Origin: Anthoceros angustus
Lineage: Eukaryota > Plantae > Anthocerotophyta
Assembly: GCA_010909165.1 (NCBI GenBank)
Contig: MU008187.1
Span: 190,247-254,246 of the forward strand
DNA: 64,000 bases
Direction of reading: 5' to 3'
The translations under genes and the position numbers were made by a program. Positions within the stretch are counted from its first letter, which is position 1. Every line of letters begins with the position of its first letter. Of this stretch, positions 3,315 to 61,929 are shown piece after piece. The notes beneath the pieces are model-generated. The model was not told the origin of the DNA and ran no database searches. It saw only the letters and a list, made by a program, of their open reading frames with translations.

Positions 3315-6300
3315 ATGGGGCCCAAGAAGGCAGCGGAGGTATGGGAGCCCTGGCGGTTGGTGGAGCGCATCATCGTCACCAAAAGATACCCCGACTTCGG
3401 GCCCTGGCTGGAGGAAGCGGAAGAACTGGTGGGGCAATGGCACTTGGACATCTTCAGTGCGGTTTGGACGTTTGACAGCGTCGCGCTCGTCCGAGAGTAC
3501 GCCAGGAAGATGCTGGCAGTCGCCAACAAGGAGGTTTGCTCCAAGAGCTCGAAGGAGGACCCCAGGAGGTGGACCGTGGAGGTCCTGAGGGCGGTTTACA
3601 ACCGCCCGGTGGAGGAAATTGGGGGCGTAGTCCCGGAGCCCCTCAAGGTGAGGGGGAAGGTGGAAGCGGCGAAGGCGGCCATGCTGAGGCCGGGGATGCA
3701 ACGGTCGTCCAACAGCTGGTTAATGTCGGATCTGCTAGATAGGCGGGTGAGGGCGGTGGCCAAGGTCATTGTCCATTGGAACATGCTCACCAAGGTGCAT
3801 CACCTTGGTGACAATCTTCTGGTGTTTCTATACGCCCTACAGCGAGGGAAGAGGGCCGACTGGGGGCATATCATCTTCGCCCGGATCAACCAGGAGGCCA
3901 GGAAGCTGCGGAGTGAGAAGCCTCCTCCGTCAGCACTGTTACCCTTCCTCATCCATGTATGGGGACATCTCAACCTCCTGAAGGAGGGAGAAGAGGAGCG
4001 AGCGCTCCGGAAAGGGCTGGCGGCCCTACCAGAGGCGGAGCGGGAAGGAGCGAAGGCGCCAGAGGAGAGGTCCGACCTCCTAAGGCCAAACGGGCCCGGG
4101 AGGAGGACGATTGGGAAGGGGTCCCGGATTCCATTCGACTGGAACGGACCCCCTCGCCACCCCGGGAGGTGTGGGAGCCTTGCTCCTTCTGGTTCCGGAA
4201 GCGGAGGTCCCCGCGTCGGACGGAGCACTTACGGGGAGGGAGCTGGCACTGGCGACGCCCACTAGCCAGCAACCCACCACGGCCCCAGCAGCGGAGCCAC
4301 GACGGACAAAGAAAGTCGTCAAGAGGCGGAAAACGGCCCCCAAGGTGCAGGGGGCACGCGCACCATCCGAGCGCCCGCCCCGACAGGAAGAGGGAAACGC
4401 GCTCCCGACCTCACCACCGCCGAGCCCCAAACGAAGGCGGGCGGAGAAGGAGTTAGCGGCCAAACGGGCCAAGGAGGTGGAAGGACCGGACCAGGGCACT
4501 CAGGACCTGAGGGTCCTGATCAGGTCCGGAGAGCCAAATCCGGACTCGCTCTGGACTGCAATATGGCGGTCCCTGACGGACCGGGAGATGCCGGCAACCA
4601 CGCCGGACTTCTTGGGGGCCTCACCCGCAGCAGCCGTGGAAGAGACACGGCGAGTTTTGGCAACCGCCATGGACGGTATGCTTTGGGGTCTCGGGACTAG
4701 AAGACCTGTGAAGTGGAGGCCACTGTGAGACGATGGTGCCTCCAGAGCAGTGGAGGTGGCCTAAGCGCCAAGAAGAAGGCGGAGTCCTCGCCCAATCGAG
4801 GAGGGAAGGCCGAGAAGCGGAGCGGGAGGTCCGGCCTCGAAGACCGGACTAAGGTCCTTCACCGTATCAGTGGCGCAGGAGGCCCAAGCGGCAGAGGACC
4901 TCTCCAGCAATGAGAAGCGCAAGGGGAGCCGGAGGAAGCCCAAGATAAGCGGAGCTCGAGACTGGCCGAGGCGGCTGACGAAGCAACACCAAGCCCGGGA
5001 GGCCTGTGAAGGGGCGGAAGGCGGAAGCTGCTAAGACCGATCGGGACCATTACCTAGATCGGAACCGGTGGAGGGAGTTTCAGGACGGCCAACTCAAGGC
5101 GGAGTAGGTGGCAGCGGAGGCACTTGCCAGGGCAAAGGAGAGGAGGCCAAGAACTGTGAGATGGAGGATCTCCGAGTCCAGTTGCGTGGGGTGGAAGAAC
5201 GGCGGCAAGAGACGGAGGACCGCAAGGAGACCTTGGAGCTATAGCTCCAAGACACAATTGAGCGGAACGGGGCTCTCCGGGGCGTGATCGCCGATCACGA
5301 ACGTGAGATAGAGCAACTCCAGCTCTGTTGGAGGGCGGACGAAGTGCGGCGACGGAATAAGGAGCAGGACGTTGCGGAGATGGAGAAGGACCTAAATGAA
5401 GCAAGGGACCGGGCGGAGTTGCCGGACCGCCTAGGAAGAGAGATGGCGGAGCTTCAGGATAGGATGAACGGAGGAGCACGGGCCCTGGAGGCGGAGAAGA
5501 AGCTGCTAGTCCAGCTGAGGAAGGCGGAGGGGGAACGGTGCGCCCTCGCAAGGAAGTTGGCAGAGACGCAGAAGCGAAGGGAGATGGAGCAGGAGGAGCA
5601 GCAGCGGCGGCTGCAGGAAGTGACGGAGGCCTCCCTGGCGGCCTCACGAGATTCTCGCCTTGCCCAATCGCGAACCCGGCTGAACGGGCAAAGAAGTCGG
5701 CAAAGACGCCACCGCCGGAGCACCTATGGCGAAGGGAATATCGGGTGCTCCAGGCACATGTGGAAGAGGCTATCCAGCAAGTCGACTCGGATTTTGCCTA
5801 CTACCACGCCGAGCTTCTCAAGGCCCTGAAGGTTCTGCGTCACCCACGACAACTAGACGGACCTCCGGAAGGATCAGAAGGCGGGGGAGGTGAAGAAGGG
5901 CCTGGGGACAGTACCGGAACCCTGGGGGCCTTGTTCGGTGACGACGGCAGTGGTGGAGAGGAGCCCCAGGAGGAGCAGAACGCGGCCAACGTAACAGGAC
6001 CTGAGGTAAGTCCGCCGCAACCAACCGGGGGGAATAGAAACGAGAGCCCCGAAAGGAGTGGTGAAGGAGGAGACCAGCCGGACCCAAGCCATGAAGAGGG
6101 TCCGGCGAGTGAGGATGGACCCCTAGCAGTCGAGGGTCAAGGGGTCGTGGGTCCGGGACTTGAGGTCCGGACCCTGGTAATAAGGCCGGACCCCGAGGTC
6201 CGGACCCCAGAGGCGAGACCAGACCCTGAGGTCCGGACTCCGGGAATAAGGCTGCCTCCTAAAGATCGGACCCCGGAATCGAGACCGGACCCCGAGGTCC

Positions 6301-6542
6301 GGACTCAGGAGGAGAGGGAGAGACACCACCGGCCTACTCAGGCGGAGCAGTCATCAGGTGGTCCCACAGGTCAGGGACCCACCCGGAGGTCAGGGGAGGA
6401 GGATGTGGTGGTTACCGTGGTTGTCGACCGCCAGAGCCCACCGGCTGTGGTCTCGAAGGAAGGGCCCGCCTCGCGGATCATCCGATTGGGTGCGCCGCAA
6501 CTGCCAAGGCTGGGAATTAGGACATCGCCGAGGCAGAGCTAA
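3315..6542 (+). mobile_element. Frameshifted long accessory ORF of probable Ty3/gypsy (Tat/Athila-like) retroelement type; no RT, integrase or gag motifs seen
   Basis: Overlapping + ORFs (3315-4265, 4111-4728, 5284-5829, 5538-6542). They give an N-terminal domain ending GKRADWGHIIF...LLPFLIHVW, a Pro/Arg-rich linker, an E/R-rich coiled coil and a low-complexity tail. It is intronless and GC-rich. Confidence 0.45.
6161..6306 (+). repeat. Short coding repeats GACCCCGAGGTCCGGAC (PDPEVRT)
   Basis: Three full and one partial copy in ORF 5538-6542. Confidence 0.8.
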
Positions 6543-7269
6543 GGGCACCCTGTGCCCACCGACGGAGATAGGCGGAGGGGGAAGATAGGCGGTCGATTAG
6601 GATACACCGAAATGGGCCGCCAGCAATTAGGAGTGTAATAAAGACGCCGACCTTGGGCGTAGTATAAGAGGGCCGAAGTTGCTCTAGTAAAGCATCTTTC
6701 TCTTGGGGTGGATACCGCATTTCGCTGTAGACCCTTGCGCCTTTGCTAACGTGAGTCCCGAGTCATGCAGCACAGCCCGGAGAGACCGATCAAGGTCCCG
6801 TGGCGGACCCTAACGTGGTGGTGTGTGCAGGAGTGGACGATCCGGACCCTTGCTCGTCAGAAAGCACCGCCCGACTCGGACGACCGGAACGCGTGAGCCG
6901 GGAACCCGAGGGCGGCAGAGCCCTGACGAGAGGCCCCATGAACGACGCGAGGTCCGAACCACGCAGCCCACCCGCTTTTCCAAGAAGTGACAAGAGTGTT
7001 GAGAGAGGTAAGGAGAGTGGACTAGACGGACGAAGAATGATCGATTGGCTACGGACGCGAACGGTCTCAAACGCTTTGGCTACACCGGCTCCCGGGTGAA
7101 CGTTAAGGGTGGTTAGTCGAGAATGGTGCACGCGCCTAAGTCCGAAACGCCATTACGCATTTGATGAGAATTGGTTGAAAACGTGTCAAACGAGCCCATC
7201 ATTCTCTTGGGAACGGACCCTTGCTACAACGACATGATATTGTGCGCGCCGGCAGTTATCGAAAGTCCC

Positions 7270-8010
7270 GCCACAAGCCGCCTCGGCCCGCCTGCTGTCA
7301 AGGAGCCCCGCCTCGGCCCGCCTGCCGCCTCGGCCCGCCTGCTGCCGCCCGCCCGCCTGCCGCCTGCCGCCCGCCGCTGCCGCCCGGCCCGCCCAGCCGC
7401 CGCCCGCCTGCCGCCTGCCCGCCCAAGCCGCCGCCCGCGCCTTGTCCTCGGAAGGAGCCCCGGCCTCGGCCCGCCCCGCCCGCCGCCTCGGCCTCGCCTG
7501 CCGCCTGCCCGCGAGACCGCTGCTCGCTGGCGAGACCGCTGCCCGCGAGACCGCCCGCCTGCTGCCCGCCTGCCCGCGAGACCACGGCTCGCCCGCGAGA
7601 CCGCTGCCGCCCGCCTGCTGCCCGCCTGCCGCCGCCGCCCGCCCGCCCCGCCGCCGCCGGCCCGCCCGCCCGCCTGCCCGCGAGACCGCTGCTCGCCCGC
7701 CCGCCCGGCCCGCCTGCCAGACCGCTGCCCGCCCGAGACCGCTGCCCGCCAGACCGCTGCTCGCCCGCCCGCCCGCCTGCCCGCGAGACCGCTGCCCGCC
7801 TGCCGCCGCCCGCCTGCCGCCCGCGCCTCCCTCCCCGCCCACGCGCCTCCTCCCGTGGCCCGGGCCTCCCTCCCTGCTCGCGCCTCCTCCCGCCCCGCGC
7901 CTCCTCCCGCCCCGCGCCCTCCTCCCGTGCTCGCGCCCTCCCGCGCCTCCTCCCGCCCCGCGCCCGCGCCTCCCGCCCGCTCACGGCGGCATCGCCCCGC
8001 CTTCCGCCTT
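7270..8010. repeat. Extremely GC-rich, C-skewed low-complexity tract (copy 1)
   Basis: Recurrent CCCGCCTGCC and CGCGAGACCGCTG motifs. The ORFs in all frames are P/A/R-only artefacts. Confidence 0.9.
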
Positions 8011-8999
8011 TAGTTTGAAACACCCCGCGCCGCTCATACTCGCACGACTCTAAAATCAAGCATGGTTGGTTTACATCTCAACCTCGTTGTGGTGGGTGCG
8101 ATCGGGTTGTGCCGTGGCCGGGCAAAATACGGCAGGATATCCTGTATGGACCGTACATAGTGTTGCGCGAAGTATACCATGATGAGAGAGAATCGTGATG
8201 GGCGAGGCATGGCATGCCACGCCAGATTTCACACGCGCGAAGCATTGATTGCTTCGGAGATTGAGACTCAGGCATAGACCCAGCATGGTCACTTAAGTGG
8301 GTGCTAGACTGGGTGAAAGTCATACTGGAGATGCTTCTCCATTCTTCAAGACTTATTTTAAAATTGAGATGGGCCAGACTGCGTGAACATGGTGCCAGAT
8401 TGTGAGTAGAAAGGTGAAGAAATAGAAAAGCTAAGGAAGAAGTTGGAAAAGCTGAGTATGACAGCTGGAGCAGTGCCTTGAGAATCAAGATGTTATTTTG
8501 CGTGAGGCTTGAGGTTTTATAGCAGCAAGTCACAGAGTAAGTGAGCACTGGCTGACTGGTGTGTGCAGGAGTGGACGATCCGACCCTTGCTCGGAGAGCG
8601 ACGACGGACCGGAACGCGTGGGAGTCGGGCGTCGGACGGAGAGGCCCCATGAACGACGAAGGAGGTCCGAACCACGCAGCCCACCCGCTCTTTTCCAAGA
8701 AGTGACAAGAGTGTTGAGAGAGGTAAGGAGAGTGGACTAGACGGACGAAGAACAGACTGATTGGCTACGGACGCGAACGAGTCCTTAAACGTTTGGCTAC
8801 ACCGGGCCTGTTCGGTGAACGTTAAGGGTGGTTAGTCGTAGAATGGTGCACGCGCGCGCCTAAGTCCGAAACGGTCATTACGTACGGATGAGAATTGGTT
8901 GAAAACGTGTCAAACGGAGCCCATCATTCTCTTGGGAACGGACCCCTTGCTACAACGACATGATATTGTGCGCGCCCGGCAGGCCATCAGCGAAAGTCC

Positions 9000-9670
9000 C
9001 GCCACAAGCTGCCTCGCCTGCTTTCGAGCCGCCTCGGCCCTCGCTCGCCTGCCGCCGCCCGCCCGCCTGCCGCCGGCCCGCCCAGCCGCCGGCCTCGCCC
9101 CGCCTGCCTCGGCCCGCCCCGCGCCTCGGCCTCGCCTTGTCCTCGGAAGGAGCCCCCGTCCTCGGCCCGCCCGCCCGCCTGCCTCGGCCCGCCTGCCCGC
9201 GAGACCGCTGCCGCCCGCCCGCCCGCCTGCCAGACCGCTGCCGCCCGCCCGCCCGCCTGCCGCCGCCCGCCGCCCGCCGCCGCCCGCCCGCCTGCCGCCG
9301 CTGCCCGCCCGCCCGCTGCCGCCCGCCTGCCGCCCGCCCGCTGCCGCCCAGACTGCGGCCGCCGCGCCCGCCCGCCTGCTGCCCGCCTGCCGCCCCGCGA
9401 GACCGCTGCCCGCCCGCCGCCCGCCCGCCGCTGCCGCCCGCCTGCCGCCTCGGCCCGCCTGCCGCCTCGGCCTCGCCTGCCGCCGCCCGCCCGCCCGCCC
9501 CGCGCCTCCTCCCGTGGCCCGCCTCCCTCCCGTGCTCGCACTCCTCCTCCCTGCTCGCGCCTCCCTCCCTCCCGCGCCCTCCTCCCTCGCGCCTCCTCCC
9601 GCGCCCTCCCTCCCGCCTCGCGCCCGCGCCTCCCGCCGCTCACGGCGGCATCGCCCCGCCTTCCGCCTTT
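9000..9670. repeat. GC-rich low-complexity tract (copy 2)
   Basis: Same motifs and flanks as 7270-8010. Confidence 0.9.
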
Positions 9671-10204
9671 AGTTTGAAACACCCCGCGCTCATACTCGCA
9701 CGACTCTAAAATCAAGCATGGTTGGTTTACATCTCAACCTCGTTGTGGTGGGTGCGACATCGGCCAGCCGGGCAAAATACGGCGATGACATCCTGTATGG
9801 ACCGTACATAGTGTTGCGCGAAGTATACCATGATGAGAGAGAATCGTGATGGGCGAGGCATGGCATGCCACGCCAGATTTCACGCACAAGCATTGATTGC
9901 TTCGAGATTGAGACTGCATAGACCAAAGATGGTCACTAAGTGGTGCTAGATCGTGAAAGTCATCGAGATGCTTCTCCATTCTTCAAGACTTATTTTAAAA
10001 TTGAGATGGGCCAGACTGCGTGAACATGGTGCCAGATTGTGAGTAGAAAGGTGAAGAAATAGAAAAGCTAAGGAAGAAGTTGGAAAAGCTGAGTATGACA
10101 GCTGGAGCAGTGCCTTGAGAATCAAGATGTTATTTTGCGTGAGGCTTGAGGTTTTATAGCAGCAAGTCACAGAGTAAGTGAGCACTGGCTGACCGGTGTG
10201 TGCA

Positions 10205-55634: not shown

Positions 55635-57456
55635 TCATGCACCTCTACCAGCAGGCAGTATGTTCAATGCGACCTCCTTCAGAGAAGGCATTGCAGATTG
55701 CTCGTGCACTACTACATAGTCGTCATCCACTCTTCGCAGAACCTGCCACGGACCGGGATAGGCCCTGCACGGGAATCAAACACCAACCATGATTCCTTTT
55801 CAACCGCCAACATCCATCCAATAAAGGCGATGGCAAAGGAGGTTAACCTGAATAATGCTCCTCCCTGGGTGCCTTTGAAGTTGTGGATGTAGTATGCAGT
55901 CTCAAACCTAGGTAGGAAGCTTGTCGCCAGGGCTGCAAGCTTCGGGTAGAAGAAGGACGGGTAGTCTGGCCCAGCTGTTGTTAAGAAGGACACAACCCAC
56001 AACGTCCAACCATGTGTTATGCCACGACGGGTTGTCTGCAAGCTGTCATCCCAACAAAGTTTTCCAATACCTAGGTGCGTTTACAGAAGGATACAGCCGC
56101 TTCTTATTCTATCCAGCTCCCCGTTGAAGACTATAATAGGGCGACCTGAGGACACTGCGGAGTCCTGAAAGAGCTCCTCCACAGCCAGCATTTCTGGAAA
56201 ACACAATAGCCCTAACATCTCAGCAGGAAAACAAGAGGGATTTCCAGCTCGAAGCATGTTACAAGTAGAACTTTACCGTTCACGTTGAACGAGGGGTAAG
56301 CCACAACAAACATCTCATCACTAGGTTTTGCACGGTCAGCCATCCTCAACTTCTTGCCAAATCCACCGAGGCCAAAATCCTCCAATCCAGAGGGCCTGGT
56401 TAAGAAGTCCAGTTGAAACCTGGTTCCCTCAAACTCACCAGCTCTAGCCACATCAACCTCGTTTGCATCTGGCAAAAACTGCACAGCCAAGGCCTCAATG
56501 ATGCTCTACATGAGCGAGAGAGCAGCAGGAGCACGTTCCAAACTCACTACTCTCGTCGCCGCTGCTTTCTGGCTTGGCACCAGAGCTTCGCAAAAATTCC
56601 GGATGAAACCGATATTCTTTGACATTTCAATTCCTCCCTCAGCATCACCTGCCAAGCGTTCTCATGAAATCTTCCATCCTCCGTCGGATGATCTGATCTT
56701 ACATCCAGACAATCATATAGCAACAAGGTGACTCACTCACCTGGAACGGAGCTAAGGCCAGCAGTAGGGAACTCGATTTCCTGTGATCAAGCGCACGAAA
56801 CGGCTTGTTTCGCTGAAATGGTGAAATGAAGGGGCACAAAGCAGAAGGTGGACGAGCAGGCACAGGCGGAGAAGACCAGTAATTTCTTGGAGTCTGCAAG
56901 CGCGGCTTTGGAGGCGTTTGTGACCTGGGATGGACGATGAATTCAGTATGGCAAGGAAGAGTACACCAGAGACAAAAGGCCAGCATTGTCGTCACCACAT
57001 ACCAAGGTGAACTCACCTGTCGCATGAGCTGGTCATAATCGGCAGGAAACTGCACAGCCGCGCGTGGCGGCAATGGCAAGCGCGAGCAGTCATACCTCCG
57101 TGGTGGTAAGTGCAGCTTGCAGTTACTCCCATGGCTCAGCTGGGGGAGTGGCACAGGCATTCAGTCTGTGAGATGCATGAAGGAAAACAATGTAGAAAAA
57201 GCATCCCGCTGTTGAGGCAAACGTACCGAAGACGGGAAGGGCGAGGATAAGGTACCCATCGTCAGGTGTCGGAAACAGTGTTGTTTGGTTGCATACTACA
57301 TACATACAGCAACTGGGCATGAATTTGTGGGCAGCGGGATTTGGTCCTGGTTCCCCCTACAGTACGTGCATCACTTGTGTAGACAAACCCGGTCAAGGAA
57401 GAAGCCGAGGTCGATAACTTCTTGACAGATCTAATGAGTGCAGATGAAGAAGGCAT
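55635..57456 (-). CDS. LPA3: LOW PSII ACCUMULATION 3 (DUF1995 family), chloroplastic, multi-exon
   Basis: Exons encode FPADYDQLMRQ, GDAEGGIEMSKNIGFIRNFC, FLPDANEV..F.GTRFQLDFLTRPS..EDFG..MADRAKP.DEMFVVAYPSFNVN, YPSFFYPKLAAL..FLPRFETAYYIHNFKGTQGGALFR and AYPGPWQVLRR..MPSLKEVALNILP*. The start is inferred. Confidence 0.88.
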
Positions 57457-57600
57457 TGTGGCCAGAGTTTGACCTACTTCCGGACTCTGCTGCCAGGTCG
57501 TGTTACACCCTGCTGTCAACCATTCGGAAGATGCACTAGACTTCTCTCTGTGCAGATAAGCTGCATGCTCTTGCTACATCGTGTGATTGGACATTATAAG

Positions 57601-57730
57601 CTTGGAGAAAGTCTCGTGATGCGATAACAAGACATGGCTTGCTTGTGGGCTTGTGTGAGGGGATGCTGTGAGACTTGGAGAATGTCTCGTGATGCGATAA
57701 CCAGACATGGCTTGCTTGTGGGCTTGTGTG
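57601..57730. repeat. ~57-bp direct repeat x2 upstream of LPA3
   Basis: CTTGGAGAA.GTCTCGTGATGCGATAAC.AGACATGGCTTGCTTGTGGGCTTGTGTG at 57601 and 57674. Confidence 0.8.
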
Positions 57731-58157
57731 TGGGCATCCTCTGTGACATGCCGGACGTAATAGAGGAGAACTCATGGAGCAATATCCTTCCGACCTACCC
57801 ACCTTGTGTTTGCAGACAGCTGCTTCTTCCAGCTCCCCTTCGAGGCACGGATGTAGCCCATGCCACCAACAGACCGCCTGTACCTGTTTCTCTATCCGTC
57901 ACAAAGCAGGGCCTCCACAGCTGAGAAGATTTCTCTCTTCGGTCCACCTCGCATGCGCAACTCACTGCCATGACGGAGATACATCACAAAGCATGAGACC
58001 AGACAACGAAGGAGAGGGCCATGCAAGACACAAAGACTGTTTCGAAACAGCCCTTGCATTGGGCACACATCAGCTCACCTACTCTCTTAGTGAAGCACGG
58101 CTCAAGGATTAGGCTGCCCGAGGAACAAACACTGACCGAACTCAGCCCACAACCTCT

Positions 58158-60013
58158 TCACTGTGCTCTGGACCTCACGGATCTCCGCTTCTTGTAGAGC
58201 TTCGCCAGTCTCGCATGCTCCCGGGCAGCCGAGACAAGCTCGAGGGGAAAGATGGTTTCACTCGTCGACTTCAGAGCCTTGTAGCCAAGAAGCGACGATA
58301 TCCGGTTTAGGCAAGCAGACTTGTCCACACCCCCGTCCTGCACCCTTCTCGGCGTGTAGGCAGGATCAAACACCAGCAGTGGAGGCAACCCCGACAAATG
58401 ACTAGCCAGGAAGTTGATGGCAATGTCATCACATCCCTGCACCTCGTCCACGTAGTCTCTCAACTCCTGCAAACAAAAAAAACACAACCACCATCTCAAC
58501 ACCCACTTCTCACTCAAAACCAAACTTACTCCCCACAAACAAAACACCCAACAAGCGCAGCACCTGGGGAGCATCGCAGGTATACGCTCTAAAGTAGTCC
58601 GCATGCATAACCATGCCCCCATTCGACGTGACCAAGGAATATCTCCTCCCGGGCTTCCCATACACCAACACCCCAGACCCAACATCCCTCGAATACGCAG
58701 CCGCAGAGAACCCCACAATCCGGTACGGGTCCTTCTTCCACGCACGAAAAGCAGCCATGACCGCGGCCTTACCAACCTTCACCACCGAATCCACAACCAA
58801 AACACAAGCCGTCCCGAGGTTCGGAATGGGCCTGAACTTATCATTCAAGCTGCTCCTCCCGGAATACCTCACATCCACAGAGCTCCGCAACCCAAAATCC
58901 TTGGGATCCTCAGGCACGGTCTTGGGCGACCCCCAAACCACAAACATCCTCTCCACCACATCCATACTGTCATAATGCTCCAGCACCTCCTTCAACCTCA
59001 CCATCCCCTCCTCCCCGCCCTCCCCAAAGAAGACCACCACCGAGAGCTGCTCCAACCCCGCCCCCGCCTGCCTATACGCCATGAAATCCCCCAAACACAC
59101 AGCACTATGCCTCAACATCGGCCGGGACAACCCACCACCACCTTCCGTCCCATTTGCAGCCTCCCACCGCAGCATCATCCGAAACGCATCCCACCACATC
59201 CCATCATACCTCCTCGTGCTCGGCTGCCTCGGATCCTGCACCAGGTTCCAGGGCTTCCCAAGCCCCGAGAAATGCAGCACCAGGAGCTTGGGCTCCACCC
59301 ATGCGTCCCAGGTGGAGAACTGCGACACCCGCACCAGCGCATTGTACCCGTAGTGCAGCTTCCCTCCCTCCCGATACCAGTCGTGGAAGTACTCGTTCAG
59401 GAATCCCTGGTCCCCCACGTTGGGCGACGGGAGCAAAGAAACCTTCCCCAGCATGTCCTCAAAGACGCTCGCATTGGGGTGGAGAACCATGAGCCCGCTG
59501 TTGAAGCGGTCCGGGGGCAGGCTGTCAGGCACCGCGGTGAGCTGGGGGCGGGGGCCCAGGAAGAGGTGGTCCAGGCTCCGCAGCACCAGCATGTCCGCGT
59601 CCAAGTAGACGATGCGGCGGTAGTCCGTCATCCCCCACAGCGTGAGCTTGGAGTACCTGCAGGGCTTGGCGATGGCGGCTCGGGCCTCCGTCACCTGCCA
59701 CGGATACTCCACCGGGTTCCCCACCCGGTGCACTGTCCCCCCGAGCGCCCGCAGCCTGGCCCCCACCCGCTCCGAGACCTCCGGCATGGCCAACACCACG
59801 ATCTCTTTCGCCGTGCCCGTCTGCCGCAAGGAAAACACCAGCACAGCCGCCGCCTCCTCCATCGCGTCGTTGCACAGCAGCGTCGCGTACGCCTCCTTCC
59901 CCGGCCCCTCCTTCCCGCCGCCTCCGCCGGCGGCGCCGCCCACAGGAAGAATGCGTACCCGCCGCCGTGATCTGCAGCAGCAGCGCCAGACCCACCACCC
60001 GCCGAGCCTCCAT
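58158..60013 (-). CDS. Two-domain glycosyltransferase: GT8 (glycogenin/PGSIP-like) fused to GT64 (EXTL/EPC1-like); one intron, apparent frameshift near the N-terminus
   Basis: GT8: AYATLL, YSKLTLWGMTDYRRIVYLDAD, FNSGLMVLHP, GDQGFLNEYF, HFSG..KPW. GT64: SSLNDKFRPIP.L.T..VLVVD, AF.AWKKDPYRIVGF, YSLV, HADYFRAY, CDDIAINFL, KSACLN. The hydrophobic leader MEARRVVGLALLLQITAAG lies in another frame. Confidence 0.85.
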
Positions 60014-60219
60014 CGCACCTGCGTCACCCTCTCCCCCTTCTCCTCCTCCTCCTTCCTCTTCTTCCTCTTCTTCCTCTTCTTCCGCTTCTCTCGACTTCAC
60101 TTGCATGCCATGCGGGCTTTTATACCTCCTCTTCCTCCTCCCGTGCTCCTTCCACTCCCGGCTTCTTGTGCTTGCTTTGAGGCCTGAATTGCTCTCGGGT
60201 ACCGGGCCTTCTTGGCACG

Positions 60220-61929
60220 ATGTTTGTCGCGACCTGCTGCGCCGCCTGCTGCGCTTCCTGCGCCTGCGCGGGGATCCGGGGCGTAGCCGAGGGGATCTCG
60301 AGGCGGTCGGCCCGCCTTGCCTACTGCGGGCTCTTCACGCTCTCGCTGATCCTGGCGTGGCTGGTTCGGGACTTTGCAGGGCCGCTGCTGCACAAGATTC
60401 CATGTGGGTGTGTGAATTTCGCTGCTGTTCGTGCTTTGCAAGCGCAATTCTTGAAGGAACGGTTTGTGGGTGGTGCAGGGATCAATGTCTTCACCGACAC
60501 GCCCAGCGACGAGTGGTTTGCGACGCAGGCGGTGCTGCGCGTGAGCTTGGGAAACTGCCTCTTCTTCTTGACTTTCGGTGTGTTGATGATCGGCGTGCAC
60601 TTCCAGAATGACTTCAGAGATCCGATCCACCACGGGGGTTGGATGTTTAAATTCGTCGTCTGGTTTCTCACGATGCTGCTCATGTTCTTCCTGCCCAATG
60701 GCGTTGTGGACGCATACGGTATGCAGAATGCGGCAGCTTTGTTGTTTTGGGCGCTGTGTTTAGGAGCTCGCTTAAGAGGTTGATGAATAAAAGGTGAACT
60801 TTTTGCAGGAACGGTGTCGAGATTCGGATCTGGGTTGTTCCTCTTAGTGCAAGTGCTCATCCTGCTGGACTTCACCTACAATTGGAACGCGGCGTGGGTC
60901 GCAGAGGATGAGCGATTATGGTAACTGTGTTTAGCCTTTGAGTACATACATACTGTGGGTTTCCGGATTTGTGGCAAGCATGTATGTAAGCTGGAATTTG
61001 TGCTTCTGCATTCAGGTATGGTGCGCTGCTGGCAGTGTCTCTGCTGTGCTACGCTGCCAGTTTTGTGCTGTCGGGTTTCCTGTTCTTCTGGTTCAATCCC
61101 GCTGGCCAGGACTGCCAGCTGAACATCTTTTTCATCGTTTGCACTCTTGTGTTTGGGCTGGCCTTTTGTGTGGTCTCTCAGTTACCCATGGTATCTCCAC
61201 CACTCTGGCAGTGTATGGTGCTGACTGCTGCTCACCACATGGCTGATGCATTTCTGATGATCACATTTCTGTGCCCTGAAACTGTAACAGGTGAATGGCA
61301 GCCTTCTGCCAGCTTCCGTGATTGGTCTCTACTGCACCTATCTCTGTTACAGTGCCCTGTCCAGCGAGCCTCAGGACTATGCCTGCAATGGGCTCCATAA
61401 GCATGTGGGAGCAGTGTCTACAGGAACTCTGGTGATGGGGATGATCACCACTCTCCTTTCACTTGTCTACTCTGCTGTGCGGGCGGGATCTTCCACCACC
61501 TTTCTGTCTCCACCTTCGTCACCAAGGGGTTAGTCACCTTCGCACATGTGCGTATTCGAGCTGCCTGCCAACGTTCAGGAATGGGTCTTACCTCTGAGCT
61601 GTGAATGGTGTGTGGCTGTTTCAGCTCCCCGCAAGCCATTGCTGTTCTCAAAGGAGGAGGACGACGATGTGGAGGAGGGGAAAAGAAGCGAGGAGGCACG
61701 TCCTGTCACCTACAATTACTCCTTCTTCTACCTCATCTTTGCACTGGCAAGCATGTACTCAGCCATGCTTCTCACCGGCTGGGGCAATGCTGCCGCATCA
61801 GAGGAGGACATCATCGACGTAGGATGGCCATCAGTCTGGGTGCGAATCTGCACAATATGGATCACCGCTGGGCTCTACGTCTGGTCCCTGGTCGCTCCAG
61901 CCATCTTCCCAGACAGAGATTTCTCCTGA
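60220..61929 (+). CDS. SERINC: Serine incorporator (SERINC/TMS membrane protein), multi-exon
   Basis: Cys-rich N-terminus, SRRSARLAYCGLF, QAVLRVSLGNCLFF, DFRDPIHHGGW..KF, GSLLPASVIGLYCTYLCYSALSSEP, YNYSFFYLIFALASMYSAMLLTGW, GWPSVWVRI and LYVWSLVAPAIFPDRDFS*. Confidence 0.95.

What the first reader, a model, noticed from the sequence alone, without database searches (positions are those of the whole stretch)
58158..60013. GT8 + GT64 glycosyltransferase fusion: candidate two-step glycan or GIPC head-group enzyme
Seen: one reading frame carries a complete glycogenin/PGSIP-type GT8 domain (DAD motif, GDQGFLN) directly followed by an EXTL/EPC1-type GT64 domain. Established: in angiosperm GIPC sphingolipid synthesis, the GT8 enzyme IPUT1 adds GlcA and the GT64 enzymes GMT1/GINT1 add the next sugar, as separate proteins. 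Known bifunctional GTs pair other families (EXT GT47-GT64, LARGE GT8-GT49). Inference: this could be a natural fusion of consecutive steps. The GT64 DDD position reads VLVVDSVV, so that half may instead be an inactive acceptor-binding module. I do not recall this architecture from seed plants but cannot exclude that it is catalogued.
Basis: partly seen in the sequence, partly recalled or inferred. Interest (0 to 1): 0.78.

Follow-up and report, generated by a model that had tools for sequence, protein, structure and literature searches.

The report
Two-domain plant glycosyltransferase, one half degenerate

Summary
A minus-strand gene (ATG 60013, stop 58158) encodes Pfam GT8 followed by Pfam GT64. 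It is not one reading frame: a 97-nt intron (58467-58563) splits the GT64 domain, and the window has two 1-nt gaps in G-runs near the start. These are probably assembly errors, because transcript contigs carry the missing letters.

Contigs from four runs are spliced, and two of them span both domains, so this is one transcript.

The architecture is not rare. An exhaustive profile search found about 80 collinear GT8-GT64 clusters, including Cyanidioschyzon, Cyanidium, Rhodotorula, Jimgerdemannia, Mesotaenium and Closterium. About 10 more clusters have the reverse order.

The window protein groups with the Zygnematophyceae copies. That whole clade has lost the GT64 UDP/Mn-binding residues (DDD is now DSV; the Tyr, Arg and Asn are gone). 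The domain is still under purifying selection (dN/dS about 0.15).

The GT8 motifs are intact. In ML trees GT8 falls outside the IPUT1, GUX and glycogenin clades, and GT64 falls outside the GMT1 clade. AU tests cannot reject a sister position for either.

Best reading: a type-II membrane GT8 alpha-glycosyltransferase with an old pseudo-GT64 module. The GIPC idea is unsupported but not excluded.

The parts
58564..60013 (-). Coding exon 1: signal anchor, GT8 domain, linker and the first two thirds of the GT64-like domain
   Evidence: ORF and Pfam hits; transcript contigs cover it without a break
59890..60013 (-). N-terminal signal-anchor coding stretch. It is broken in the window by two apparent 1-nt gaps in G-runs (at 59957/59958 and 59894/59895).
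   Evidence: Three-frame reading; extra letters in contigs of X1, X2, X6 and X8 (table 4); intact ORF in P0001/L001; hydrophobic segment 5-25 in P0001
59158..59913 (-). GT8 (glycogenin-like, retaining GT-A) domain with intact DAD, FNSG, GDQGF and HFSGxxKPW motifs. The Pfam envelope is 59245-59844.
   Evidence: fold matches glycogenin and Gat1, TM 0.75-0.80
59056..59157 (-). Inter-domain linker; low-confidence loop in the model. Relatives carry a 9-nt in-frame insertion after 59132.
   Evidence: pLDDT below 50 at model residues 258-269; insertion, table 4
58564..59055 (-). GT64-like domain, N-terminal part (nucleotide-binding half) with degenerate donor-site residues
   Evidence: Pfam E 4e-23; alignment to EXTL3 and EXTL2; motif table
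58783..58791 (-). Codons D-S-V at the position of the GT64 DDD (DxD) metal/ribose-binding motif
   Evidence: Aligned to EXTL3 'siDDDa' and EXTL2 'mvDDDt'; 111 of the 120 intact-type GT64 domains compared read DDD
58467..58563 (-). Intron 1 (97 nt, GT..AG, phase 0) inside the GT64 domain
   Evidence: Joint that skips 97 nt in contigs of all four runs (table 5); same position in L001
58158..58466 (-). Coding exon 2: C-terminal third of the GT64-like domain (GCDDIA motif kept, GIS loop deleted, Arg replaced by Lys) and stop codon 58160-58158
   Evidence: Pfam GT64 positions 158-237, E 3e-8; alignments
57965..58078 (-). Intron 2 (114 nt) in the 3' UTR
   Evidence: Joint in contigs of all four runs (table 5)

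Best explanation
The gene encodes a type-II (N-terminal signal-anchor) secretory-pathway membrane protein. Its luminal part is a catalytically competent GT8 retaining alpha-glycosyltransferase, followed by a GT64-fold domain that no longer binds UDP-sugar and Mn2+ in the canonical way. It is the streptophyte branch (Zygnematophyceae plus this plant lineage) of an old, widespread eukaryotic family of collinear GT8-GT64 enzymes. Most members of that family keep both active sites and probably add two consecutive alpha-linked sugars.

In this branch only the GT8 step is likely to be catalysed. The GT64-like half is kept by selection as a non-catalytic module, for dimerisation, scaffolding or acceptor-glycan binding.

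Shown here: gene structure, transcription, domain identity, motif states, family membership and purifying selection.
Inferred: membrane topology, loss of GT64 activity, and the role of the dead domain.
Unknown: the donor sugar and the acceptor.
For: Gene and transcript:
- Pfam finds both domains.
- Spliced contigs come from four runs, and two of them span both domains.

GT8 half:
- It is 105-117 bits to glycogenin and Gat1.
- All catalytic motifs are intact.
- The model has pLDDT 87.5, and the fold matches glycogenin at E 1e-20.

GT64 half:
- The EXTL3 UDP/Mn contacts Tyr670, Arg672, Asn697 and Asp745/746 (PMC9178029) correspond to G, G, G, S and V in the window.
- FPRxH has become SAAAY, and LTK has become TSN.
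- The same decay is seen in P0001, Mesotaenium, Closterium and P0108. These form a starred clade with the window in the whole-length tree (97*). The GT64-only tree recovers the same grouping at 94.

Selection:
- dN/dS against L001 is 0.11 for GT8 and 0.13-0.17 for GT64.
- 12 of 19 listed differences from close relatives fall at third codon positions.

Family and topology:
- About 80 collinear fusion clusters exist, most with DDD intact.
- Most family members checked have a single N-terminal hydrophobic segment.
Against: - Some GT-A enzymes work without a DxD motif, so loss of activity is inferred, not shown.
- The CDD acceptor-side motif is retained.
- dS is saturated, so the dN/dS values are rough.
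- The window's N-terminus is out of frame as assembled. If that is real, this copy would lack its anchor.
- Topology and Golgi location were not tested.
- No substrate evidence of any kind.
Confidence: 0.6

Rival explanations
1. Bifunctional two-step enzyme. Both halves are active, and the GT64 half uses a non-canonical (metal-independent or different-nucleotide) donor site to add a second alpha-linked sugar to the GT8 product.
For: - Most family members keep both active sites.
- The domain is under purifying selection.
- The CDD motif and the fold are retained.
Against: Five separate donor-contact positions are replaced at once. The loss is shared with Zygnematophyceae, so it is old.
Confidence: 0.15
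2. GIPC head-group enzyme. GT8 adds GlcA to inositol-phosphoceramide as IPUT1 does. The GT64 half adds, or only recognises, the next sugar, as GMT1 and GINT1 do.
For: - In plants a GT8 (IPUT1) and then GT64 enzymes (GMT1, GINT) act consecutively on GIPC (PMC7980081, PMC9113257).
- GT8 and GT64 have been fused at least twice, in both orders.
- AU tests do not reject a sister position to IPUT1 (p 0.086) or to the GMT1 clade (p 0.275).
- A Serinc gene sits head-to-head with it. This is weak evidence.
Against: - The ML trees place neither domain with IPUT1 or GMT1.
- It lacks IPUT1's C-terminal membrane segments.
- It has the family-specific CRYSKL motif where IPUT1 has GVYTKL.
- The GT64 donor site is decayed.
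Confidence: 0.1
3. Glycogenin-type self-glucosylating primer of alpha-glucan. This is how the probable C. merolae member (CmGLG2) has been read.
For: - The best solved relatives are glycogenins and Gat1.
- CmGLG2 overexpression doubled starch (PMC8232737, PMC12901461).
- P0054 is probably CMG174C, but that identification is my inference.
Against: - An N-terminal signal anchor implies a luminal enzyme.
- The Tyr195 position of glycogenin aligns to Ser.
- The GT8 domain is outside the clade that holds yeast glycogenin.
Confidence: 0.05
4. This copy is a decaying pseudogene: the two frame-breaking gaps near the start are real.
For: As assembled, the ATG at 60013 is out of frame with GT8.
Against: - A same-species contig (X1) and three relatives carry the missing letters.
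- The rest of the ORF is open and under purifying selection.
- It is spliced and expressed.
- Another note from this scan reports frame-breaking gaps 'as assembled' elsewhere in this genome.
Confidence: 0.07

Closest known systems
Collinear GT8-GT64 proteins in databases: Mesotaenium ME000090S10179, Closterium CAI5486826, C. merolae BAM79674, Cyanidium KAK4537557, Rhodotorula KPV73292, Jimgerdemannia RUP48306
   Same: - Same domain order.
- Homology across both domains and the linker.
- N-terminal anchor and the CRYSKL motif.
- The Zygnematophyceae copies share the decayed GT64 site.
   Different: - The red-algal and fungal copies keep DDD and the other donor contacts.
- The Zygnematophyceae copies are about 1000 aa, with a C-terminal extension that is absent here.
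- I found no biochemical characterisation of any of them.
Exostosins (GT47-GT64), especially EXTL3, and EXTL2
   Same: - The GT64 fold and motifs align.
- It is a tandem Golgi glycosyltransferase in which one domain can be inactive. In EXTL3 that is the GT47 domain (PMC9178029).
- GT64 domains mediate dimerisation there.
   Different: - The partner domain here is GT8, not GT47.
- Here the GT64 half is the decayed one.
- No heparan-type acceptor is known in plants.
LARGE1/2 (GT8-GT49)
   Same: A type-II protein with an N-terminal GT8 domain followed by a second GT-A domain. LARGE1 appears among the fold hits.
   Different: The second domain is GT49 and active. LARGE builds an alternating polymer, and both of its sites are intact.
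Plant GIPC pathway enzymes IPUT1 (GT8) and GMT1/GINT1 (GT64)
   Same: The same two CAZy families act in consecutive steps (PMC7980081, PMC9113257).
   Different: - They are separate proteins.
- IPUT1 has C-terminal membrane segments.
- Neither domain of the window protein falls in their clades in ML trees.
Glycogenin and Gat1 (Skp1 alpha-galactosyltransferase, 6mw5)
   Same: These are the best sequence and fold matches for the GT8 half, and all catalytic motifs are shared.
   Different: They are cytoplasmic single-domain enzymes. The window protein has an anchor and a GT64-like domain, and the self-glucosylated Tyr is not conserved.

Membership tests
CAZy GT8, glycogenin-like (Pfam PF01501) | Profile match above the gathering score | tested here: met
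   42.6 bits against a cutoff of 24.3; 117 bits to Gat1 and 105 bits to glycogenin-1
CAZy GT8, glycogenin-like (Pfam PF01501) | DxD, FNSG, GDQG and HxxGxxKPW catalytic motifs; GT-A fold | tested here: met
   YLDADM, FNSGLM, VGDQGF and LHFSGLGKPW; Foldseek E 1e-20, TM 0.75-0.80 to glycogenin
IPUT1 (GIPC glucuronosyltransferase) | GT8 domain falls inside the IPUT1 clade | tested here: inconclusive
   Outside the clade in the ML tree. The constrained tree is 34 lnL units worse, but AU p is 0.086.
IPUT1 (GIPC glucuronosyltransferase) | Several membrane segments C-terminal to the GT8 domain | tested here: not met
   IPUT1 examples P0013 and P0019 show 4-5 C-terminal hydrophobic segments. The fusion family has a GT64 domain there instead.
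IPUT1 (GIPC glucuronosyltransferase) | Transfers GlcA from UDP-GlcA to inositol-phosphoceramide | not testable with these tools
   Needs an enzyme assay or complementation
CAZy GT64 (Pfam PF09258) | Profile match above the gathering score | tested here: met
   82.3 bits (exon 1) and 33.5 bits (exon 2) against a cutoff of 21.3
CAZy GT64 (Pfam PF09258) | DxD (DDD/DED) that binds Mn2+ and ribose | tested here: not met
   DSV in the window and DSN in P0001, aligned to the DDD of EXTL3 and EXTL2
CAZy GT64 (Pfam PF09258) | UDP contacts equivalent to EXTL3 Tyr670, Arg672 and Asn697 | tested here: not met
   Gly, Gly and Gly at the aligned positions (FFGGEEG, VVWGSP). Intact members have xTYxR and VWH/N (residues from PMC9178029).
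GMT1/GINT1 (GIPC GT64 enzymes) | GT64 domain falls inside the GMT1-containing Viridiplantae clade | tested here: inconclusive
   Outside the 16-row clade (100*) that holds P0182, which is 89% identical to Lolium GMT1. AU p is 0.275 for a forced union. GINT1 itself was not in the tree.
Collinear GT8-GT64 fusion family | Same domain order, with homology through the linker and both domains | tested here: met
   Single profile stretch covering about positions 30-580 in roughly 60 proteins; alignments A1 and A2
Collinear GT8-GT64 fusion family | Monophyly with named members in whole-length and per-domain trees | tested here: met
   Groups with Mesotaenium, Closterium and P0108 at 97* in the whole-length tree. 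The grouping is recovered in the GT8-only tree, unstarred there (forks at 81 and 91), and in the GT64-only tree at 94.
Glycogenin proper | Cytosolic protein with the self-glucosylated Tyr (Tyr195) | tested here: not met
   Tyr195 of human glycogenin-1 aligns to Ser; N-terminal hydrophobic anchor

The most novel reading that the evidence does not exclude
The pan-eukaryotic GT8-GT64 family is a fused form of the two core steps of glycosyl-inositol-phosphoceramide head-group synthesis: alpha-GlcA or hexose on inositol, then an alpha-hexose or hexosamine on it. In streptophytes, once stand-alone IPUT1 and GMT1/GINT1 did that job, the GT64 half of the fusion became a non-catalytic module that recognises the GlcA-containing head group and directs the still-active GT8 to it. 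This lineage and the Zygnematophyceae would then keep a relic that reports on how plant GIPC glycosylation arose.
Probability: 0.1. Interest if true: 0.8.

Novelty: new variant of a known kind. Interest (0 to 1): 0.45.

Why it matters
Tandem Golgi glycosyltransferases (EXT, LARGE, chondroitin synthases) are the textbook makers of two-sugar repeats. The review text I read lists GT47-GT64, GT31-GT7 and GT8-GT49, but not GT8-GT64 (PMC9178029).

This work shows three things. First, a GT8-GT64 pairing is widespread in eukaryotes, and I found no biochemical study of it. Second, it arose in both domain orders. Third, one branch has kept a donor-site-dead GT64 domain under selection since before the split of Zygnematophyceae and land plants.

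That gives a natural test case for what a pseudo-glycosyltransferase domain does. It also adds a gene shared by Zygnematophyceae and this plant lineage that I did not find in other land plants. For GIPC biology it is only a lead.

Tried and rejected
- A word search with the GT64 part alone found only P0001, so the exhaustive profile search was needed.
- The ESM-Atlas feature search gave only generic GT-A look-alikes, mostly viral. It was not informative.
- Two papers that might describe the C. merolae glycogenin-like proteins (PMC6546146, PMC5740636) are not held. The identification of P0054 as CMG174C/CmGLG2 therefore rests on three points: its 584-kb chromosome, residue 613 being Met rather than the Ser613 of CmGLG1, and my memory that chromosomes are numbered by size.
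- AU tests of 'GT8 with IPUT1' and 'GT64 with GMT1' were not decisive.
- ML dN/dS estimates were unstable because dS is saturated. Only the NG86 values are used.
- ORFs downstream of the stop (56702-57802, minus strand) have no Pfam hit. There is therefore no hidden third domain like the C-terminal extension of the Zygnematophyceae proteins.
- The two exons were never joined. All searches, trees and the fold used exon 1 (and exon 2 separately), so the model lacks the last third of the GT64 domain.
- No complex-prediction job was run, because no binding claim is made.
- The list of differences is truncated (119 substitutions and 13 indels are not shown). The codon-position count and the sum of inserted letters therefore rest on the listed rows only.

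Full report
**What is there**

The feature is a minus-strand gene. An ORF at 60027..58510 carries Pfam Glyco_transf_8 (aa 62-261) and the first two thirds of Glyco_transf_64 (profile positions 14-161). A second ORF piece at 58466..58161 carries GT64 profile positions 158-237 and ends at the stop codon 58160-58158.

The quoted motifs (DAD, GDQGFLN, VLVVDSVV) are present.

**Gene model and expression**

I laid contigs of four public runs on 57800-60400. Run X1 is the same species: three of its four contigs are at least 99% alike. Runs X2, X6 and X8 are close relatives at 90-95%.

- All four runs carry a joint that skips 97 nt at 58467-58563, with GT..AG ends on the minus strand. The runs are therefore RNA-derived and the intron is real.
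- A second joint skips 57965-58078, in the 3' UTR.
- Single contigs of X2 and X6 run from 58563 to beyond 60400. Since GT8 and the first part of GT64 also share one uninterrupted ORF, the fusion is one transcript.
- The 68%-identical relative P0001 (Logan run SRR33208241, locus L001) has its second exon at the same place.

**The N-terminus**

In the window the ATG at 60013 is not in the GT8 frame. Three frame pieces read in turn MEARRVVGLALLLQITAA, YAFFLWAAPPAEAAG and KEGPGKEAYATLLC. P0001 has the matching MRVRKLLWLALLLQVSAAAYAFFL... as one ORF.

The contigs carry extra letters relative to the window:
- after 59957 in X2, X6 and X8;
- after 59894 in X1, X2 and X6;
- further in-frame extras in X1 and X6.

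The listed extras sum to 2 in X2 and to 8 in X6. Both are 2 mod 3, which is what is needed to join the ATG frame to the GT8 frame. Both positions lie in G-runs. Another note from this scan reports frame-breaking gaps 'as assembled' in this genome. I take the two gaps to be assembly errors (about 85%), with the caveat that one search lists only part of the indels.

**How common the architecture is**

A word search returned five more proteins with both Pfam domains. An exhaustive profile search of 1.84 billion cluster representatives gave 12,919 hits. I re-scanned the best 150 with per-domain HMMs:
- about 80 are collinear GT8-GT64;
- about 10 have the reverse order, GT64-GT8(-GT8).

Named members:
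- Cyanidioschyzon merolae BAM79674 ('similar to glycogenin glucosyltransferase');
- Cyanidium caldarium;
- several Rhodotorula species ('glycosyltransferase family 64 protein');
- Jimgerdemannia flammicorona;
- Mesotaenium endlicherianum ME000090S10179;
- Closterium CAI5486826.

Homology runs through both domains and the linker. The GT8 halves share a CRYSKL motif where IPUT1 has GVYTKL, GUX has YNYTKL and yeast glycogenin has DTLTKC. The fusion is therefore old and catalogued, but only under generic names. I found no paper that describes a GT8-GT64 pairing.

**Where this copy belongs**

- In the whole-length tree the window and P0001 are sister to Mesotaenium, Closterium and P0108 (97*). That group sits inside a 10-row clade (100*) with intact-site members P0063, P0077, P0088, P0096 and P0123.
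- The GT8-only and GT64-only trees recover the same grouping. In the GT8-only tree it is unstarred (forks at 81 and 91) and P0108 stands apart.
- The nearest named relatives are thus the Zygnematophyceae, the algal sisters of land plants. This points to vertical descent.
- Apart from P0001, no other land-plant protein with both domains appeared in either search. The best other plant hits are GT8-only IPUT1 proteins at about 95 bits.

**The GT64 half is degenerate**

The EXTL3 structure paper names the UDP/Mn contacts: Leu668, Tyr670, Arg672, Asn697, Asn723, Asp745 and Asp746 (PMC9178029).

| Site in intact members | Window | Other streptophyte copies |
|---|---|---|
| xTYxR stretch (Tyr670, Arg672) | FFGGEEG | decayed |
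| VWN/VWH (Asn697) | VWG | decayed |
| DDD (DxD motif) | DSV | DSN in P0001; RAS, EDT, DDT in the Zygnematophyceae-clade copies |
| GFFPRxH | GFSAAAY | decayed |
| LTK | TSN | decayed |
| GIS loop | deleted | - |
| Arg before the conserved Cys | Lys | Arg kept in P0001 |
| CED/CDD motif | kept | - |

Of the other GT64 domains compared, 111 read DDD. A second, unrelated clade of fusions shows a similar decay.

**The dead-looking half is still under selection**

Against L001, NG86 dN/dS values are as follows (dS is saturated, so they are rough):

| Region | dN/dS |
|---|---|
| GT8 | 0.11 |
| GT64, exon-1 part | 0.13 |
| Exon 2 | 0.17 |

Among the 19 listed differences from the close relatives in the GT64 half, 12 are at third codon positions (p = 0.007) and 11 are synonymous. 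The AlphaFold model of exon 1 is confident in both halves (mean pLDDT 87.5, pTM 0.79).

**The GT8 half looks active**

DAD, FNSG, GDQGF and HFSGxxKPW are all present. The best solved relatives are Gat1 (117 bits) and glycogenin-1 (105 bits). The fold matches them at TM 0.75-0.80. The Tyr that glycogenin glucosylates on itself aligns to Ser.

**The GIPC idea**

Plants do use a GT8 (IPUT1) and then GT64 enzymes (GMT1, GINT) on GIPC (PMC7980081, PMC9113257). GT8 and GT64 have also been fused in both orders. These are fair hints that the two families work together.

The evidence against is as follows:
- In the ML trees the GT8 domain is outside the IPUT1, GUX and glycogenin clades.
- The GT64 domain is outside the Viridiplantae single-domain clade (100*), which contains P0182. 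P0182 is 89% identical to Lolium GMT1.
- IPUT1's C-terminal membrane segments are absent.
- The GT64 donor site is decayed.

The AU tests do not reject a forced union with IPUT1 (p 0.086) or with the GMT1 clade (p 0.275). The idea is therefore unsupported rather than refuted.

**Mechanism proposed**

The protein is a signal-anchored luminal GT8 that adds one alpha-linked sugar from a UDP-sugar with Mn2+. It is tethered to a GT64-fold module that no longer binds donor. By analogy with the GT64 dimer interface of EXTL2 and EXTL3 (PMC9178029), and given the retained acceptor-side CDD motif, that module may dimerise the enzyme or hold the acceptor glycan. The donor and the acceptor are unknown.

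**Limits**

- The identity of the genome as hornwort-like comes from earlier scan notes, not from my own test.
- The organism of P0001 is unknown.
- GINT1 was not in the GT64 tree.
- The identification of the C. merolae member as CmGLG2 is an inference.

**Verdict**

This is a real, expressed gene and a member of a widespread but functionally unstudied bi-domain family. It lies in a streptophyte branch whose GT64 half is an old pseudo-enzyme domain. It is of moderate interest.

Noticed in passing
window 60220-61926 (+): A multi-exon Serinc (serine incorporator, PF03348) gene lies head-to-head with the glycosyltransferase gene, about 200 nt from its ATG. Contigs of X1, X2 and X6 run across both genes. 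Serinc proteins are linked to serine-lipid synthesis, but adjacency alone proves nothing.
   Followed up: partly
window 57965-58078 and downstream to below 57800 (-): There is an intron in the 3' UTR and a long 3' UTR: the X1 contig extends 745 nt beyond 57800. The ORFs there have no Pfam hit.
   Followed up: partly
window 60022-60090: A GA/GAA-rich simple repeat sits just upstream of the ATG. Read laying skipped it as a repeat.
   Followed up: no
window 59132: Relatives X2, X6 and X8 carry a 9-nt in-frame insertion here, in the Gly-rich inter-domain linker.
   Followed up: no
P0073 (Mesotaenium), P0086 (Closterium), P0108: The nearest algal relatives are about 1000 aa, with a roughly 400-aa C-terminal extension that is absent from the window gene. 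P0073 has a weak, sub-threshold GT61 hit at 884-952.
   Followed up: partly
P0007, P0080, P0090, P0093, P0102, P0109, P0112, P0120: A separate family has the reverse order, GT64-GT8(-GT8), with an intact GT64 DDD and often a decayed GT8 domain. Scan note s1-305937 reports such a gene elsewhere in this same genome.
   Followed up: partly
P0066, P0068, P0070, P0071, P0074, P0081, P0085, P0121, P0144, P0147: A second, unrelated clade of collinear fusions has also lost the GT64 DxD and LTK motifs. The GT64 half has therefore decayed at least twice.
   Followed up: partly
P0054 (C. merolae BAM79674): This fusion protein lies on a 584-kb chromosome and is not CmGLG1, because residue 613 is Met. It is probably CMG174C (CmGLG2), which has been treated in the literature as a glycogenin. 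The reviews I read do not mention a GT64 domain or a membrane anchor for it.
   Followed up: partly
window 4001-10000: A block of unusually high G+C content (0.63-0.70, against about 0.45-0.50 elsewhere).
   Followed up: no
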